A stretch of DNA of 64,000 nt, from contig NC_047022.1 in NCBI RefSeq assembly GCF_902652985.1, positions 16,430,001 to 16,494,000 on the forward strand, written 5' to 3'. The notes below the pieces were generated by a model. That model ran no database searches, was not told the origin of the DNA, and saw only the letters and a list, made by a program, of their open reading frames with translations. This document shows positions 6,681 through 10,818 of the stretch, one piece after another. Source of the stretch: Pecten maximus (taxonomy: Eukaryota). The position numbers and the translations under genes were made by a program. Position 1 is the stretch's first letter. The number at the start of each line of letters is the position of its first letter.

Positions 6681-9600
6681 TTAATAGTATGCTGCTGTGA
6701 TACTGAGCTTTTTAACTGCTTCAAGGAGTTCCTTTTCCTTGAGGAATGTAGACATATCCACAGGTTTAAAACCTGTCACTCCAAAACTCTCCAGTTTCTC
6801 CAGCCATTCCTTCTTACTTGATATATCAAACAGGGCTTGAGTTATTTTTCCTTTGAGATCATCTGAAAAAATTGAAAGAACACTTTGAAATATTGCTAGC
6901 AGATTCGTAAATCTCAAAACAAATTTTTATTCTCACTAAATATCTCAAATATCTCAAAATAGGCAACTACATTGTGTACATTTAGTCTATTTATTTCTCT
7001 TTGTCAAAGCAATAAAAATATCCCCAAATTAAAAAAAAAATTCCCAGGTTCTAAAATCACTAGGAGGAAGATATATAGAAATCACATAAACCAATTGCTA
7101 TGCACGCATATAACCACAGGGTCTTGACACGTTATCATGACACAGAATGAAATATTTAACCCCAGAATCCAACCCCCCCAATCACTTTTGAACTATCATG
7201 TATATGTAATTATAAGTAATCTGGGGTTGAATATTTACAAGTGATCTGGGGGTCGCATCCCTGTGGTTTATTATTTCATTCTGAATTATAGAATATAGCA
7301 TGCCCCTGAGTTAAAAACCAATGATTTAAGTATAGTTTGAGCGATGCCCTACCTGGGAGGCGGGAGTTAAATACAACTGGGTAGATAGGGAGAGGTCCAA
7401 AAGACTTCAGTACGGTGAGATTTTCTTTGTGCTGTGGGTTTTGTTGGAGGTAGTTGTGTAAAATGGTTGAGTCCACAGAGGCCGATAAGGCTGTTTTGTT
7501 GAGTACCATCTGTATAGATTTCAGGTGAGATCCTGCAATACAAAGTATACAAATAAACTTTACCTGGCAAAAGAGGCCAGATAAAAACCTTAAACACAGA
7601 AAATAAAGCTATTACCTGTCCAGGAGAAAACCTGTCTAAAGCGACCAGTACCACCCTGGAACACAGGGAACAATATATGCCATGCCCAAGCAACAGTCAG
7701 ACTTCAGACACAGTATAACTTAGGACACAAATATCAAGGTATGAAAGCCTCCTAAAACCTAGAAGACAAACTTTTTCCTCAACTACACTGAATGGACGTT
7801 GGTTCTTTGCGGATTTCCCCACTTTAATTTATTAGGACACAAAATACAGTTTACAGCTATCAAAGTGATAACCTGTCTAAAATGACCAGTCAGAACCTGA
7901 ACACGCCTGTACAAGTAAAATGTGTACAACAAAATACAGTTCATCAAATAAATGGGATTACTGTATTTGCAAATAAGCACTCCTCAAACTTTTAACACTG
8001 AACTTTTACACCAGTGAAGGGTTTGTTTTTTTAGGATAAATACAGCACCATAAGTCGATACTCCTCATACAGTTGTGACTGTAATCTATTTAAAAAAGAC
8101 TTACCTGATCGGAGGACATTGCCAAAGAAACTGGAATTGAATCCCATCTTTTTCAGCTCTTGTAGTACAACCAAACATCCACTGAGGGAGGCCTCGTCTA
8201 CATAGGCAAAACTGTGTCCTCGTAAGTCATGGACCTCTTTATATTCCCCACTGTAAGAGAGAAATCATTTGTCTGTATATTCCCCACTGTAAGAGAGAAA
8301 TCATTTGTCTTTATATTCCCCACTGTAAGAGAGAAATCATTTGTCTTTATATTCCCCACTGTAAGAGAGAAATCATTTGTCTGTAACTCTAACATATTTT
8401 AGTCAACTTCACTTATAATGAATGGATGGGAATAATTAAAAGACACTTTTAAACCAATCACAGGGATTTGTCTCAGATTCACAAACCTTGTTCTTAACAC
8501 CAATCACAGGGATTTGGCTCAAATTCACAAACCTTGTCTATTACATCAGTCACAGGGACTTGGCTCATGGTGTATTATACATGTAATTATACTGTATATA
8601 ATATTATTATTATAGACCTTTGGTTAGGACTGTTTGCCAAGTTCCTGTGGCTCCGATGATGTCTATTTGGCACATGTTTTAAAGCTGATACTTCAATCTC
8701 ACTTCCTACATCCTCATTTGTTTTTATCCTAATCAATGAAGGTTGGTGATTTGTGGTGTTAGATTCCTCTCAATACTTCATGTGTTCCCTATTCAACCTA
8801 TTTCACTTTCAACTAAGGTTTGTTAATTAACCAGACTACATACCATATTTTACCGGGTATCAAGGGGCCGATGCGCTGAAAATGGGCAAAAGTGGTAGGT
8901 GGCCGTCATTTTAAATCATAATAAACACATATTATTAAATGAGTTCTATTAAGGCCAGTTGGGTACCCAAAATTCTTTAGTGTGGCCATTGACCCTTTTA
9001 CCTTGACCAAAGACCATCAAAATATCATCAGGTGACCGTGTAGAACATGATGCTATATAGTATATACCATACAATGGTGTAAATGTGAGCTGGATCTGTG
9101 GTGGGGTTCATGAGATATCAAACAACACAGTCAAAAGTGAATACTACATAACCTAGCTTTTACTACAATGTGGGATGGGTGAGTGAGGTGTGGGGGAGTG
9201 TGGGTAAGGGGGGGGGGGGGGGTTGAGAGATATACAGTTTTGTGTAAAAGTACATTTCATGCTTACATGTCTGCTGTGTTGATGATTAGGTCGGAAAAGT
9301 AGACAGGATTTGCCTGACTCTTGGCGTGGACATGTAATGGGGCCGCCCCACATAACTCCACATACGAGTTCTTCTTCTGCTGCAGCGGTAGAAATGTTTC
9401 ACTACTCATGAACCCTATTAACAAACAGCATCAGCAGAAAATAGGATCACCATCACACATTATCTGATCAAAACACAATTGTGGTTTGGAATAACAAATA
9501 ATTCTGTCAAAGAACATTTAAAAAAGTATGGCCATTGATTGTAAAAGAAAAGTAAGTTCATACCTCAAGATAAAAGAGCTACATTATACAATGTATTACA

Positions 9601-10818
9601 TTATAAGTATCTTCAGAATTTTTATCGAAATATGACATCTATCAGTTATACAATACGTGCCTTTAAAAGTCACCTGTCTCAAAGTTATACTTCTAATCAA
9701 AAGAATACATGTACATATCCAGATACATAGAAAGAAACAAGAGGTCCATTAGCCCACGTTTCCTCTGGCTCTTAAACACTATGTCTGGGGTGTCAGGACC
9801 AGAGGAAACTCAAGCTAGAGGTCCATGGGCCTTATCTATCATCTGTCTTCTGAAATATTTCAGTCAATTTGACCCTTTCAGGTCCTGTTCATCAGCCTCT
9901 GTTCATCAGTCAGGGCCAACATGTACATATAATCAAAATCCCCAGGGGCAAACAAGGATCAGGAATTCACAATTTTTGTAAAGCACCTTAACACCCTTCC
10001 ATCTATGACACACAACAATGGACAAAGGATGATCAGAAAAGATCACTTGAGACTTCATCTCAGGGGACCAAAAAATCATTTGAACATGTCTATAAAGGTC
10101 ACGTGTCTAAGAAGGACACCTGTCCATACGGGGCATCTGTCTATAAAGGGCACTTACAAAATGTATCTATAAAGGTCACCAATAAAGGGTGCATGCTTAT
10201 ATGCATATCTATAAATGACACCTAACTAGTATAAAGAACACTTGTCAATAAAGGACACCTTCCTGAAAAAGGGCATCTGTCTATAAAGGCCACCTATCTA
10301 TAAAGGTAATTTGTCTATAAAGGTCACCTTTCTATAAAGGCCAAATTTCTATAAAGGGCACCTGTCTACACATGTCTATAAAGGGCATATGTTTAAAAAA
10401 AAAAAGACACCTGTCTATAACGGACATCTGTCTATACAGGATGCCTGTCTTAAAATGACACCTGCCTAAAGAGGTCATATGTATATAAGAGACACCTTAC
10501 TGAGCATGGATAGCTGAAGGTGTTTAGATAATATATCACACAACAAGAACTTTGCTTTGATCACAAAATTTGCATTTTGAAAATGAAATATAAATATTTA
10601 TTTGTAAAGATTTCTCTGTAGTGACAATTACCTATGTCCACCTCGTCGGCAGTGAAGGGGTCAGTACGTTCTCTTGGTGGTCCAGTCCACCTGGACTCGT
10701 AAATCAGATAGGTCTCCATCCCTGTTATTTCTTCCAGGTATTGCATCAACACCTCAAACAACTGAACAGGCAGACCTGGGGACAGGTAGGTGATCATTCG
10801 TAGCTTTTTCTCCGACAT
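6681..10818 (-). CDS. PhnD/SsuA-family (phosphate/phosphonate-binding, type 2 periplasmic-binding fold) protein, 280 aa, 5 coding exons
   Basis: Exons 10818-10632, 9414-9267, 8250-8105, 7532-7353, 6862-6681; all GT-AG, phases consistent, 843 nt total. Motifs: TYLSPG, VDIGFM, PVYFSDLII, DLRGHSFAYVDEASLSG, FFGNVLRSGSHLKSIQMV, SVDS, GPLPIYPVV. These parallel the PhnD-like DLKGK.FAF.D..STSG and GSH motifs. Confidence 0.85.
8241..8384 (-). repeat. 36-bp tandem repeat x4, each copy containing the intron-3 acceptor and the start of coding exon 3 of the PhnD-like gene
   Basis: Minus-strand unit CAAATGATTTCTCTCTTACAG|TGGGGAATATA(A/C)AGA; acceptor AGs at 8251-2, 8287-8, 8323-4 and 8359-60. Confidence 0.9.
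10085..10500. repeat. Degenerate ~19-20 bp repeat (ACACCTGTCTATAAAGG), probably the subterminal array of a Tc1/pogo-like MITE
   Basis: Many CCTGTCTATAAAGG variants. The same motif ends in a CAGGTTTGACTGTA terminus at 20821-20902. Confidence 0.55.

What the first reader, a model, noticed from the sequence alone, without database searches (positions are those of the whole stretch)
6681..10818. Intron-containing, bacterial-type PhnD-like phosphonate/phosphate-binding protein gene in an animal genome
Seen: a clean 5-coding-exon ORF of 280 aa with canonical splice sites, embedded among eukaryotic genes, so contamination is unlikely. Known: PhnD-family proteins are periplasmic ligand-binding subunits of bacterial ABC importers, which animals lack. 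The phosphoryl-binding STSG and GSH motifs appear here as SLSG and GSH, with an upstream Tyr (PVYFS). Molluscs are rich in 2-aminoethylphosphonate-containing lipids. Inference: the protein starts MSEKKLRMITYL with no signal peptide, so it may be a domesticated (ancient HGT or patchily retained) cytosolic phosphonate/phosphate sensor or carrier with no described animal function.
Basis: partly seen in the sequence, partly recalled or inferred. Interest (0 to 1): 0.75.

Follow-up and report, generated by a model that had tools for sequence, protein, structure and literature searches.

The report
Leaderless bacterial-type oxyanion-binding protein gene
A scallop gene with ordinary animal introns encodes a signal-less relative of bacterial phosphonate, phosphite and arsenic binding proteins, and the same uncharacterised gene occurs in several invertebrate phyla.

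Summary
On the minus strand at 10818..6681 lie five coding exons (843 nt, 280 codons) with GT-AG introns. A non-coding first exon lies near 12322. All four coding introns are spliced exactly as predicted in RNA contigs of 4 of 4 runs from 4 studies.

The product equals a public model named 'uncharacterized protein LOC117332650' (P0124). It is a Pfam PF12974 protein (120 bits). It fails the curated PhnD cut-off (79 against 261 bits).

Its nearest solved relatives are the arsenic-oxyanion sensors ArrX and AioX, then PtxB, then PhnD. It keeps five of AioX's seven pocket residues. It has a Tyr where PtxB has its phosphite 'capping' Tyr. It lacks PhnD's two amine-binding acidic residues.

The family forms one clade (100/100). 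Source-named members come from molluscs, a brachiopod, arthropods, echinoderms and hemichordates. The gene tree follows the species tree. The clade is nested among leaderless bacterial proteins. I read this as one ancient bacterial acquisition, not a mollusc novelty.

I found no paper on the animal family. The ligand is not known. My inference is a small P- or As-type oxyanion. 2-aminoethylphosphonate bound the way PhnD binds it is disfavoured.

The parts
12322..12353 (-). 3' part of the non-coding first exon (5' UTR). The donor GTGAGA follows at 12321. The exon's 5' end is not mapped; contigs carry up to 60 letters beyond the joint.
   Evidence: Loose end of an RNA contig at 10820 matches 12324..12353 exactly. 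Sequence context seen.
10632..10818 (-). Coding exon 1 (ATG at 10818; residues 1-62 plus one base). It holds strand 1, helix 1 and the family-specific E-S-R-W-x-G-P loop.
   Evidence: Joint 9413|10631 in 4 of 4 runs. tblastn of P0124 100% identical.
9267..9414 (-). Coding exon 2 (residues 64-111). It holds Ser66 (the position of AioX Cys106) and Tyr101 (the hinge Tyr, PVYFS).
8105..8250 (-). Coding exon 3 (residues 113-160). It holds the S133-L-S135-G oxyanion motif.
   Evidence: Pfam PF12974 5.1e-07. Joints seen.
7353..7532 (-). Coding exon 4 (residues 162-220). It holds His163, Asp181, the G206-P207 motif and Tyr211.
   Evidence: Pfam PF12974 2.4e-06. Joints seen. Residue counts.
6681..6862 (-). 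Coding exon 5 (residues 222-280 plus the stop). It holds the C-terminal helix and the clade-specific C-terminal Tyr-Tyr.
   Evidence: Pfam 0.013. Joint 6862|7353. C-terminal Y in 50 of 51 clade rows.
6289..6680 (-). 3' UTR, minimum extent.
   Evidence: Contig X3 record 7 runs without a break from 6862 to 6289.
8236..8382 (.). 36-bp unit repeated 4.1 times. It copies the acceptor and first bases of exon 3 into intron 2.
   Evidence: Only the copy next to the exon (8250) is used in the RNA contigs of 4 of 4 runs.

Best explanation
Shown: this is an expressed, vertically inherited animal gene of six exons, five of them coding. It encodes a 280-residue protein without a signal peptide. The protein has the two-lobed type-II binding-protein fold of Pfam PF12974.

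Shown: it belongs to a clade whose source-named members are all bilaterian invertebrates. The clade's hallmarks are an E-S-R-W-x-G-P loop, a Tyr at position 211 and a C-terminal Tyr-Tyr. The clade is nested among leaderless bacterial proteins. Its nearest bacterial group is a Rubrobacteraceae-type clade whose genes often sit right behind a phnD-phnC-phnE-like importer operon.

Inferred: one bacterial gene entered the animal line before the protostome-deuterostome split and gained introns there.

Inferred: the protein works as an intracellular Venus-flytrap receptor. The two lobes close on a small tetrahedral or pyramidal oxyanion that carries P or As, such as phosphite, phosphate, arsenate or arsenite, or on a small head group of that kind. 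The ligand would be held by Tyr101, Ser133, Ser135, His163 and Asp181 and capped by Tyr211.

Inferred: with no ABC permease in the genome it cannot feed a transporter. It would therefore act as a sensor, buffer or carrier.
For: Gene and RNA.

Identity with public model P0124.

Family: PF12974 120.2 bits.

Fold: AlphaFold2 with 112 aligned rows gives pLDDT 95.2 and pTM 0.91. VIA Z is 27.0 for ArrX 6xab (rmsd 2.8, 247 aligned), 26.6 for AioX 8ed5, 25.7 for PtxB 5lq1 and 24.9 for PhnD 3qk6. Open apo forms score lower, at 20.0 and 18.1.

Sequence against PDB with the family profile: ArrX 8.5e-36, AioX 2.6e-24, PtxB and PhnD about 1e-15.

Pocket counts in 51 clade rows (30 named as animals by a source, 21 unnamed) and 61 bacterial rows:
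- Tyr101: 45 of 51 and 61 of 61.
- Ser133: 49 of 51 and 61 of 61.
- Ser135: 45 of 51 (Thr in 5 more) and 61 of 61.
- His163: 48 of 51 and 61 of 61.
- Asp181: 47 of 51 and 61 of 61.
- Tyr211: 41 of 51, against 0 of 61 in bacteria (Pro 43, Gln 18).

Tyr211 pairs with Te_PtxB Tyr208 in the HMMER alignment.

Tree (62 rows, rooted on lipoprotein PhnD-like proteins): animals 100/100; animals plus Rubrobacteraceae-type clade 95/81; Ambulacraria 95/55; arthropod clade 99/96; Lingula plus molluscs 97/90.

Intron positions look shared:
- Fragment ORFs of the starfish cluster (P0096, P0098) and of a land-snail cluster (P0100) stop resembling the protein at residue 63, the end of exon 1.
- 39 of 54 fragment ORFs, 38-59% identical, lose likeness at residues 219-224, the end of exon 4, while the ORF goes on.

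No permease: 0 PF00528 matches.

Bacterial context: 12 of 80 loci have the gene 9-172 nt behind phnE-like or phnD-like genes. The L015 operon is shown.
Against: - No ligand was tested, and the pocket reading rests on alignments. I had no coordinates of the model, so I could not check that Tyr211, Arg43, Trp44 or the C-terminal Tyr-Tyr face the cleft.
- Two of AioX's seven pocket residues are not kept in the scallop. Cys106 corresponds to Ser66. That site is Cys in 61 of 61 bacterial rows but in only 20 of 51 clade rows, and it varies even among scallops (S, S, S, R, D). Tyr88 has no aligned Tyr.
- The AioX paper states that the conserved pocket alone does not set oxyanion selectivity (PMC5908839, abstract and passages read).
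- PF12974 also holds a sterol binder (7t1m, Z 18.8; PMC10942540, search listing only).
- The bacterial gene context is mixed. 68 of 80 loci show no importer nearby. Other loci sit by argS or by a 2-oxoacid dehydrogenase operon.
- The sister-group node is only 95/81.
- Absence from cnidarians, vertebrates and other eukaryotes is not shown, because the searches scored only 8000 word-sharing candidates.
Confidence: 0.6

Rival explanations
1. It is a true phosphonate receptor for 2-aminoethylphosphonate or its lipid or glycan precursors, tied to the animal's own phosphonate synthesis.
For: - The family name and the S-x-S...H motif.
- The same chromosome carries an intron-split PEP-mutase-like gene: five TIGR02320 exon matches in order at C8:6,780,083-6,790,007, best 1.6e-26. 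So phosphonate synthesis is plausible in this animal.
- The nearest bacterial relatives follow phnDCE-like genes.
- From recall, with no call behind it: 2-aminoethylphosphonate is reported in molluscs and in locust glycans, two of the groups that hold the gene.
Against: - The PhnD equivalog score is 79.4 against a cut-off of 261.1.
- PhnD's amine binders Glu177 and Asp205 correspond to Thr183 (Asn in 37 of 51 clade rows) and Tyr211 (equivalences from PMC5908839).
- Tyr211 aligns with the PtxB cap that sterically excludes bulkier R groups. PtxB binds methylphosphonate about 100-fold more weakly than phosphite (PMC5700983, passages read).
- No cnidarian member was seen, although cnidarians are, from recall, rich in phosphonates. 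The searches cannot show absence.
Confidence: 0.15
2. It is an enzyme built on a binding-protein fold, as Thi5 and MqnA are. It would use the Cys or Ser at position 66 with His163 and Asp181, and would act on a small phosphorus or arsenic compound inside the cell.
For: - It is leaderless and cytosolic in bacteria and animals alike.
- Cys66, His163 and Asp181 are invariant in 61 of 61 bacterial relatives.
- Cys and Ser alternate in animals (C 20, S 17 of 51).
- The Thi5 HMP synthase appears among the fold matches (4h67, E 3.6e-11).
Against: - Position 66 is also Glu (5), Thr (4), Asn (3), Arg or Asp in clade rows. That does not fit a catalytic nucleophile.
- The three residues are ligand-binding residues in AioX (PMC5908839).
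- The best structural matches are all plain binders, and Thi5 is far below them.
Confidence: 0.12
3. It has lost small-ligand binding and serves another role in animals, for example as a protein partner recognised through its conserved C-terminal Tyr-Tyr.
For: - The C-terminal Y is kept in 50 of 51 clade rows and YY in 45 of 51. It is absent from bacterial rows, 50 of 61 of which end before this column in the alignment.
- The last 6-10 residues extend beyond the aligned ends of ArrX and AioX.
- Position 66 is relaxed in animals.
- One scallop model has Pro at His163.
Against: Five pocket positions are kept in 45-49 of 51 rows over the span of Bilateria. That is hard to explain without a ligand.
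Confidence: 0.1
4. It is bacterial contamination, a recent mollusc-only transfer, or a dead gene.
For: Bacterial-type domain. Single copy in the genome: only this locus matches PF12974.
Against: - Four GT-AG introns plus a UTR intron, all spliced in RNA of four studies.
- A chromosome-scale contig with animal neighbours.
- An intact frame.
- Orthologues on chromosome-size contigs of five phyla.
- A gene tree that follows the species tree.
Confidence: 0.01

Closest known systems
ArrX (Chrysiogenes arsenatis) and AioX (Rhizobium sp. NT-26), periplasmic arsenate and arsenite sensors of PF12974
   Same: They are the best sequence and fold matches: 8.5e-36 and 2.6e-24, Z 27.0 and 26.6. The pocket residues Tyr131, Ser161, Ser163, His192 and Asp210 (AioX numbering) are kept as Tyr101, Ser133, Ser135, His163 and Asp181. 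The AioX-specific Cys106 is kept in all 61 bacterial relatives and in 20 of 51 clade rows.
   Different: ArrX and AioX are periplasmic and signal to a histidine kinase encoded next to them (PMC5908839). This protein has no leader and no such partner. The scallop has Ser at the Cys position and no aligned Tyr88. A four-residue insert (W-x-G-P) sits in that loop. Identity is about 20%.
PtxB, phosphite-binding protein of ABC importers
   Same: Fold Z 25.7, rmsd 2.6. The S-x-S...H motif and the hinge Tyr are shared. The P-x-Y-P motif places Tyr211 on the capping Tyr208 of Te_PtxB. That residue gives the P-H...pi contact and shuts out larger ligands (PMC5700983).
   Different: PtxB is periplasmic and works with a transporter and, per the paper, phosphite dehydrogenase. 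PtxB lacks the Asp181 equivalent in the alignment. I could not check the lobe-1 Asp that holds the cap in PtxB.
PhnD, the 2-aminoethylphosphonate-binding protein of E. coli
   Same: Same Pfam family and fold (Z 24.1-24.9). The Tyr, Ser-x-Ser and His phosphoryl binders are shared.
   Different: It fails the curated PhnD model. It has no leader, and no PhnE or PhnC partner was found. The amine-binding Glu177 and Asp205 are replaced.
Transferrin and lactoferrin lobes, the animal proteins with this fold
   Same: Type-II binding-protein fold used in animals without a transporter. Z 16.7-17.4.
   Different: Transferrins are secreted and duplicated and bind iron with carbonate. No sequence relationship was detected here. 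They rank far below the PF12974 matches.

Membership tests
Pfam PF12974 (Phosphonate-bd; type-II solute-binding proteins) | Score over the family's gathering cut-off across the whole domain | tested here: met
   P0124 scores 120.2 bits against a cut-off of 27, residues 13-259 on profile 8-241. Exons 3-5 hit in order.
Pfam PF12974 (Phosphonate-bd; type-II solute-binding proteins) | Two-lobed Venus-flytrap fold | tested here: met
   Model pLDDT 95.2. Z 24-27 over 247-259 residues to ArrX, AioX, PtxB and PhnD.
PhnD proper (NCBIfam TIGR03431 equivalog) | Score over the curated equivalog cut-off | tested here: not met
   79.4 bits against 261.1. The wider subfamily TIGR01098 also fails, 93.4 against 112.05.
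PhnD proper (NCBIfam TIGR03431 equivalog) | Signal peptide or lipoprotein anchor (extracytoplasmic location) | tested here: not met
   Strand 1 starts at residue 6. The highest 19-residue hydropathy mean is 1.02, against 1.97 for the lipoprotein PhnD-like protein of L015.
PhnD proper (NCBIfam TIGR03431 equivalog) | Partner permease and ATPase (PhnE, PhnC) | tested here: not met
   0 matches to PF00528 in the 918-Mb genome, against 14 of 14 control genomes. The six-frame search reads exon by exon, so a very split gene could be missed.
PhnD proper (NCBIfam TIGR03431 equivalog) | Acidic pair that binds the amine of 2-aminoethylphosphonate (Glu177, Asp205) | tested here: not met
   By alignment to AioX and the AioX-PhnD equivalences in PMC5908839, the positions hold Thr183 and Tyr211.
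ArrX / AioX arsenic-oxyanion sensors | Seven-residue pocket (Tyr88, Cys106, Tyr131, Ser161, Ser163, His192, Asp210) | tested here: inconclusive
   Five of seven are kept in the scallop, six of seven in oysters, limpets, Lingula, Ptychodera and Asterias. Tyr88 has no aligned Tyr in any clade row.
ArrX / AioX arsenic-oxyanion sensors | Periplasmic location and an adjacent sensor kinase and regulator (XSR cluster) | tested here: not met
   No leader. The animal locus has introns and a MUL1-like neighbour. No kinase was seen in the bacterial contexts annotated.
ArrX / AioX arsenic-oxyanion sensors | Selective binding of arsenite or arsenate | not testable with these tools
   Needs ITC or thermal shift.
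PtxB phosphite binders | Capping tyrosine that gives the P-H...pi contact | tested here: met
   Tyr211 pairs with Te_PtxB Tyr208 in the P-x-Y-P motif. Tyr in 41 of 51 clade rows. This rests on alignment only.
PtxB phosphite binders | Lobe-1 Asp that hydrogen-bonds the cap; link to phosphite dehydrogenase | not tested
   I had no model coordinates. I ran no search for a phosphite dehydrogenase.

The most novel reading that the evidence does not exclude
Before the protostome-deuterostome split, an animal ancestor took up a cytoplasmic bacterial oxyanion receptor of the ArrX/AioX/PtxB kind. Many invertebrate lineages have kept it ever since as an intracellular sensor or chaperone for a reduced-phosphorus or arsenic oxyanion. 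It gained a PtxB-like tyrosine cap and a C-terminal Tyr-Tyr on the way. That would be the first free-standing bacterial solute-binding protein working as an intracellular small-anion receptor in animals. It would point to an unrecognised phosphite or arsenic handling pathway in invertebrates.
Probability: 0.25. Interest if true: 0.75.

Novelty: new variant of a known kind. Interest (0 to 1): 0.6.

Why it matters
- Binding proteins of this family are known as extracytoplasmic parts of bacterial importers and sensors. Here a leaderless branch is fixed, expressed and conserved in at least five animal phyla, and no function has been published for it.
- It is a clean, datable case of a bacterial gene kept in animals since before Bilateria diversified. 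The evidence is shared intron positions and a gene tree that follows the species tree.
- Its pocket suggests a small P or As oxyanion. Marine invertebrates handle phosphonates and arsenic in ways that are poorly understood at the protein level.
- The leaderless bacterial relatives are also uncharacterised. In Rubrobacteraceae they form the fourth gene of phnDCE-like operons.
- The protein is small, soluble and confidently modelled. A ligand screen would give a quick answer.

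Tried and rejected
- Single-sequence structure prediction gave a useless model (pLDDT 34.7). I replaced it with a run on a 112-row alignment.
- Exons 1 and 2 alone hit no Pfam or NCBIfam family. Exon 1 alone hit nothing meaningful in the PDB (best E 0.51). So the role of the E-S-R-W-x-G-P loop stayed open. The idea that Trp44 stands in for HtxB Trp52, PtxB Tyr55 and AioX Tyr88 is only a guess. PMC5700983 places those three at one site.
- I looked for a conserved operon around the bacterial relatives and found none across the family. 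I saw three different contexts: phnDCE-like; argS, metallophosphoesterase, glpX and rho; and 2-oxoacid dehydrogenase, GntR and DHDPS.
- Contamination and pseudogene readings are rejected.
- A mollusc-specific transfer is rejected.
- Literature: five searches found no paper on an animal member. These were PhnD with horizontal gene transfer and metazoa; PF12974; phosphonate, substrate-binding protein, horizontal gene transfer and invertebrate; phosphonate, periplasmic, bivalve and horizontally transferred; and PtxB/PhnD2 product names. The library lacks most subscription journals.
- Supplements are closed. Lists of transferred genes in mollusc or echinoderm genome papers may name this gene. The supplementary alignments of PMC5700983 and PMC5908839 could sharpen the residue equivalences.
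- I read passages of PMC5908839 and PMC5700983. PMC10942540 I saw only in the search listing.
- The search of earlier findings by words gave nothing on this family.
So intron conservation rests on fragment ORFs of unnamed origin plus three cluster members tied to starfish and snail clusters.

Full report
OBSERVATION

The minus strand between 10818 and 6681 holds five coding exons:
- 10818..10632
- 9414..9267
- 8250..8105
- 7532..7353
- 6862..6681

Together they make 843 nt, or 280 codons and a stop. Each intron begins GT and ends AG.

I laid contigs of four public runs from four studies on 6100..12000. All four runs carry all four joints at exactly these places. The skipped ends read CT..AC on the + strand. 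The contigs also continue 5' of the start codon into letters that lie at 12324..12353, next to a GTGAGA donor. So the gene has a non-coding first exon and an intron of about 1.5 kb in its 5' UTR. The 3' UTR reaches at least 6289.

X3 is RNA on record. The other three runs are guessed RNA. Spliced contigs in four studies nevertheless show a processed transcript.

The window lies at 16.43 Mb of contig C8 of a 918-Mb assembly, and this locus is the only PF12974 match in that genome. The nearest long ORF (17924..18754) has GIDE and RING domains, like a MUL1-type ubiquitin ligase. Contamination is excluded.

HOW THE PROTEIN WAS STUDIED

Exons 3, 4 and 5 hit Pfam PF12974 in order. Exons 1 and 2 hit nothing alone.

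Exon 4 was searched against 1.84 billion representatives. It found 94 proteins at E up to 0.001, and 10 at E up to 1e-10. Most were short ORF fragments. Some were full-length proteins of 280-300 residues.

From those hits, word-indexed searches returned P0124, which its source names 'uncharacterized protein LOC117332650 [Pecten maximus]'. tblastn shows it is 100% identical to the window within the exon limits. All whole-length work used that public record.

WHAT FAMILY IT IS

P0124 scores 120.2 bits on PF12974. It fails both curated NCBIfam models: 93.4 against 112.05 for the phosphate/phosphite/phosphonate subfamily, and 79.4 against 261.1 for PhnD itself.

A profile of 17 family members finds ArrX (8.5e-36) and AioX (2.6e-24) far ahead of PtxB and PhnD (about 1e-15) among solved structures.

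An AlphaFold2 model built on 112 aligned rows is confident (pLDDT 95.2, pTM 0.91). Foldseek ranks ArrX and AioX first (9.4e-23 to 3.6e-20), then PtxB, and PhnD at 9.2e-17. VIA-align gives:
- Z 27.0 for ArrX
- Z 26.6 for AioX
- Z 25.7 for PtxB
- Z 24.9 for PhnD

The first two are tied. The spread over the four is about two Z units. The model fits closed, liganded forms (rmsd 2.6-2.8) better than open apo forms (Z 20.0 and 18.1).

THE POCKET

The AioX paper (PMC5908839, passages read) lists the pocket as Tyr88, Cys106, Tyr131, Ser161, Ser163, His192 and Asp210. It also gives the PhnD equivalents.

In the printed alignments, five of these pair with Tyr101, Ser133, Ser135, His163 and Asp181 of the scallop protein. 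In the 51 rows of the animal-type clade these are kept in 45, 49, 45 (plus 5 Thr), 48 and 47 rows. In the bacterial rows they are kept in 61 of 61.

The Cys106 position is Cys in 61 of 61 bacterial rows but only in 20 of 51 clade rows. The rest are Ser 17, Glu 5, Thr 4 and Asn 3, with Arg and Asp once each. Among the five scallop rows it reads S, S, S, R and D.

Tyr88 has no aligned Tyr. In its place the loop carries a four-residue insert within the conserved E-S-R-W-x-G-P motif. Arg43 is kept in 50 of 51 rows and Trp44 in 35 of 51.

PhnD's amine-binding Glu177 and Asp205 correspond to Thr183 and Tyr211.

In the HMMER alignment with Te_PtxB, Tyr211 pairs with Tyr208 in a shared P-x-Y-P motif. 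According to PMC5700983 (passages read), that tyrosine caps the site, gives the P-H...pi contact to phosphite and keeps out bulkier groups. Tyr211 is present in 41 of 51 clade rows and in none of the 61 bacterial rows (Pro 43, Gln 18).

This is why I favour a small oxyanion over 2-aminoethylphosphonate. All of it rests on alignment. I had no coordinates to measure.

NO LEADER, NO TRANSPORTER

The first strand begins at residue 6 and nothing hydrophobic precedes it. The same is true of every bacterial relative aligned, where the median lead is about four residues. So the leaderless state is ancestral to the animal gene, not a product of domestication.

The scallop genome gave 0 matches to the binding-protein-dependent permease family PF00528, against 14 of 14 control genomes.

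WHO HAS IT

Names given by the sources cover:
- many bivalves and gastropods
- the brachiopod Lingula
- the hemichordates Ptychodera and Glandiceps
- the echinoderms Asterias, Amphiura and Holothuria
- the arthropods Timema, Schistocerca and Artemia, and the mites Oppia and Medioppia

Most are on chromosome-size contigs. Most are labelled 'uncharacterized' or hypothetical. A few carry automatic family names such as 'PhnD2', 'PtxB' or a substrate-binding-protein label.

The ESM Atlas puts the scallop orthologue next to an all-eukaryote cluster of 67 members, mostly arthropods, and then next to bacterial clusters.

No cnidarian, vertebrate, nematode or non-animal eukaryote name appeared. These searches score only 8000 word-sharing candidates, so they cannot show absence.

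THE TREE

A quick tree of 112 rows gave one animal-type clade of 51 rows with support 100.

A careful tree of 62 rows was rooted on three lipoprotein PhnD-like proteins from the bacterial loci. It gave these supports:
- animals: 100/100
- animals plus a clade of leaderless proteins of the Rubrobacteraceae type: 95/81
- further leaderless bacterial groups lie outside those
- Ambulacraria: 95/55
- an arthropod clade: 99/96
- Lingula plus molluscs: 97/90
- molluscs: 100/99

The gene tree therefore follows the species tree inside animals, and the animal clade is nested inside bacterial diversity.

I left out of the careful tree 50 of the 112 aligned rows, mostly near-duplicates and distant bacteria, to fit the time limit. 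I added two rows that were not in that alignment, P0251 and P0256.

INTRON POSITIONS

Short ORFs from genomic contigs of other species act as exon read-throughs.
- Members of the starfish cluster (P0096, P0098) and of a land-snail cluster (P0100) resemble the protein up to residue 63, the end of exon 1, and then diverge.
- Of 54 fragment ORFs overlapping exon 4 (38-59% identical, so not scallops), 39 lose likeness at residues 219-224 while the ORF runs on. Seven read through and are probably bacterial or cDNA-derived.
- A starfish-cluster fragment (P0097) starts its likeness at the exon 5 boundary (by eye).

This is indirect. It fits introns that were already in place before protostomes and deuterostomes parted.

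BACTERIAL RELATIVES

A scan of species-representative genomes gave 80 loci, mostly MAGs of Rubrobacteraceae and other Actinomycetota, Acidobacteriota (Thermoanaerobaculia), Planctomycetota and Chloroflexota.

In 12 of the 80, the leaderless gene lies 9-172 nt behind phnE-like or phnD-like genes on the same strand. Eleven of those 12 are among the 16 loci at 70% identity or more to P0158. One is among the other 64.

In L015 the order is:
1. a LysR regulator
2. a lipoprotein PhnD-like protein (TIGR01098, 202.7 bits, over its cut-off)
3. a PhnC-like ATPase
4. PhnE (251.2 bits, over its cut-off)
5. the leaderless copy

Other loci sit by argS or by a 2-oxoacid dehydrogenase operon. The only functional hint is therefore a link, in the closest bacterial group, to an importer of phosphonate-, phosphite- or selenate-like anions.

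PHOSPHONATES

The scallop has an intron-split PEP-mutase-like gene 9.6 Mb away on the same contig. Its own phosphonate synthesis is therefore plausible. It does not outweigh the pocket evidence.

VERDICT

The gene is real, expressed and old.

It is a leaderless, animal-wide branch of PF12974. Of the characterised proteins it is closest to ArrX and AioX, with one PtxB-like feature. It is not a PhnD.

The function is unknown in print. Five searches found nothing. My best reading is an intracellular receptor for a small P or As oxyanion.

I rate it a new variant of a known kind, of moderate to good interest, and easy to test.

Noticed in passing
window 8236-8382: A 36-bp unit repeated 4.1 times (98% matches) copies the acceptor and first bases of exon 3 into intron 2. 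This gives three upstream look-alike acceptors. RNA contigs of 4 of 4 runs use only the copy at 8250. Another first-stage note (s1-792227) describes the same array.
   Followed up: partly
window 9843-10039 and 11025-11221: Two short stretches, one in intron 1 and one in the UTR intron, collect very high summed contig depth in all four runs (up to 60,832 in X1). Many loose ends flank them. They are most likely copies of a repeat expressed elsewhere.
   Followed up: no
window 10087-10497: Several arrays of a 17-bp unit (TATAAAGGACACCTGTC-like; 3.9 to 8.1 copies, 62-80% matches) fill part of intron 1.
   Followed up: no
window 17924-18754 (+): An uninterrupted 277-codon ORF with GIDE (6.9e-20) and C3HC4 RING (7.3e-14) domains. 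It looks like a MUL1-type mitochondrial ubiquitin ligase, the next gene upstream of the finding.
   Followed up: no
G000:C8:6780083-6790007 (L083, L084): Five exon-like matches in order to PEP mutase TIGR02320 (best 1.6e-26) on the same contig, 9.6 Mb from the finding. The scallop probably makes phosphonates itself.
   Followed up: no
L015:6548-10825 (also L003, L006, L008, L010, L012, L013, L035, L055): Rubrobacteraceae-type operon: LysR regulator, lipoprotein PhnD-like protein, PhnC-like ATPase, PhnE, then a second, leaderless PhnD-like protein. A cytoplasmic paralogue as the fourth gene of an importer operon appears undescribed.
   Followed up: partly
proteins P0126, P0128, P0131 (scallop orthologues): Among the five scallop rows, the position of AioX Cys106 reads S, S, S, R and D. 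One public model (Argopecten) has Pro at the otherwise near-invariant His163. This is either relaxed constraint in scallops or a model error.
   Followed up: no
window 6100-6510: RNA contigs downstream of the mapped 3' UTR lie on both strands and carry many variant letters and small indels between runs. It may be a polymorphic 3' UTR extension or a neighbouring transcript.
   Followed up: no
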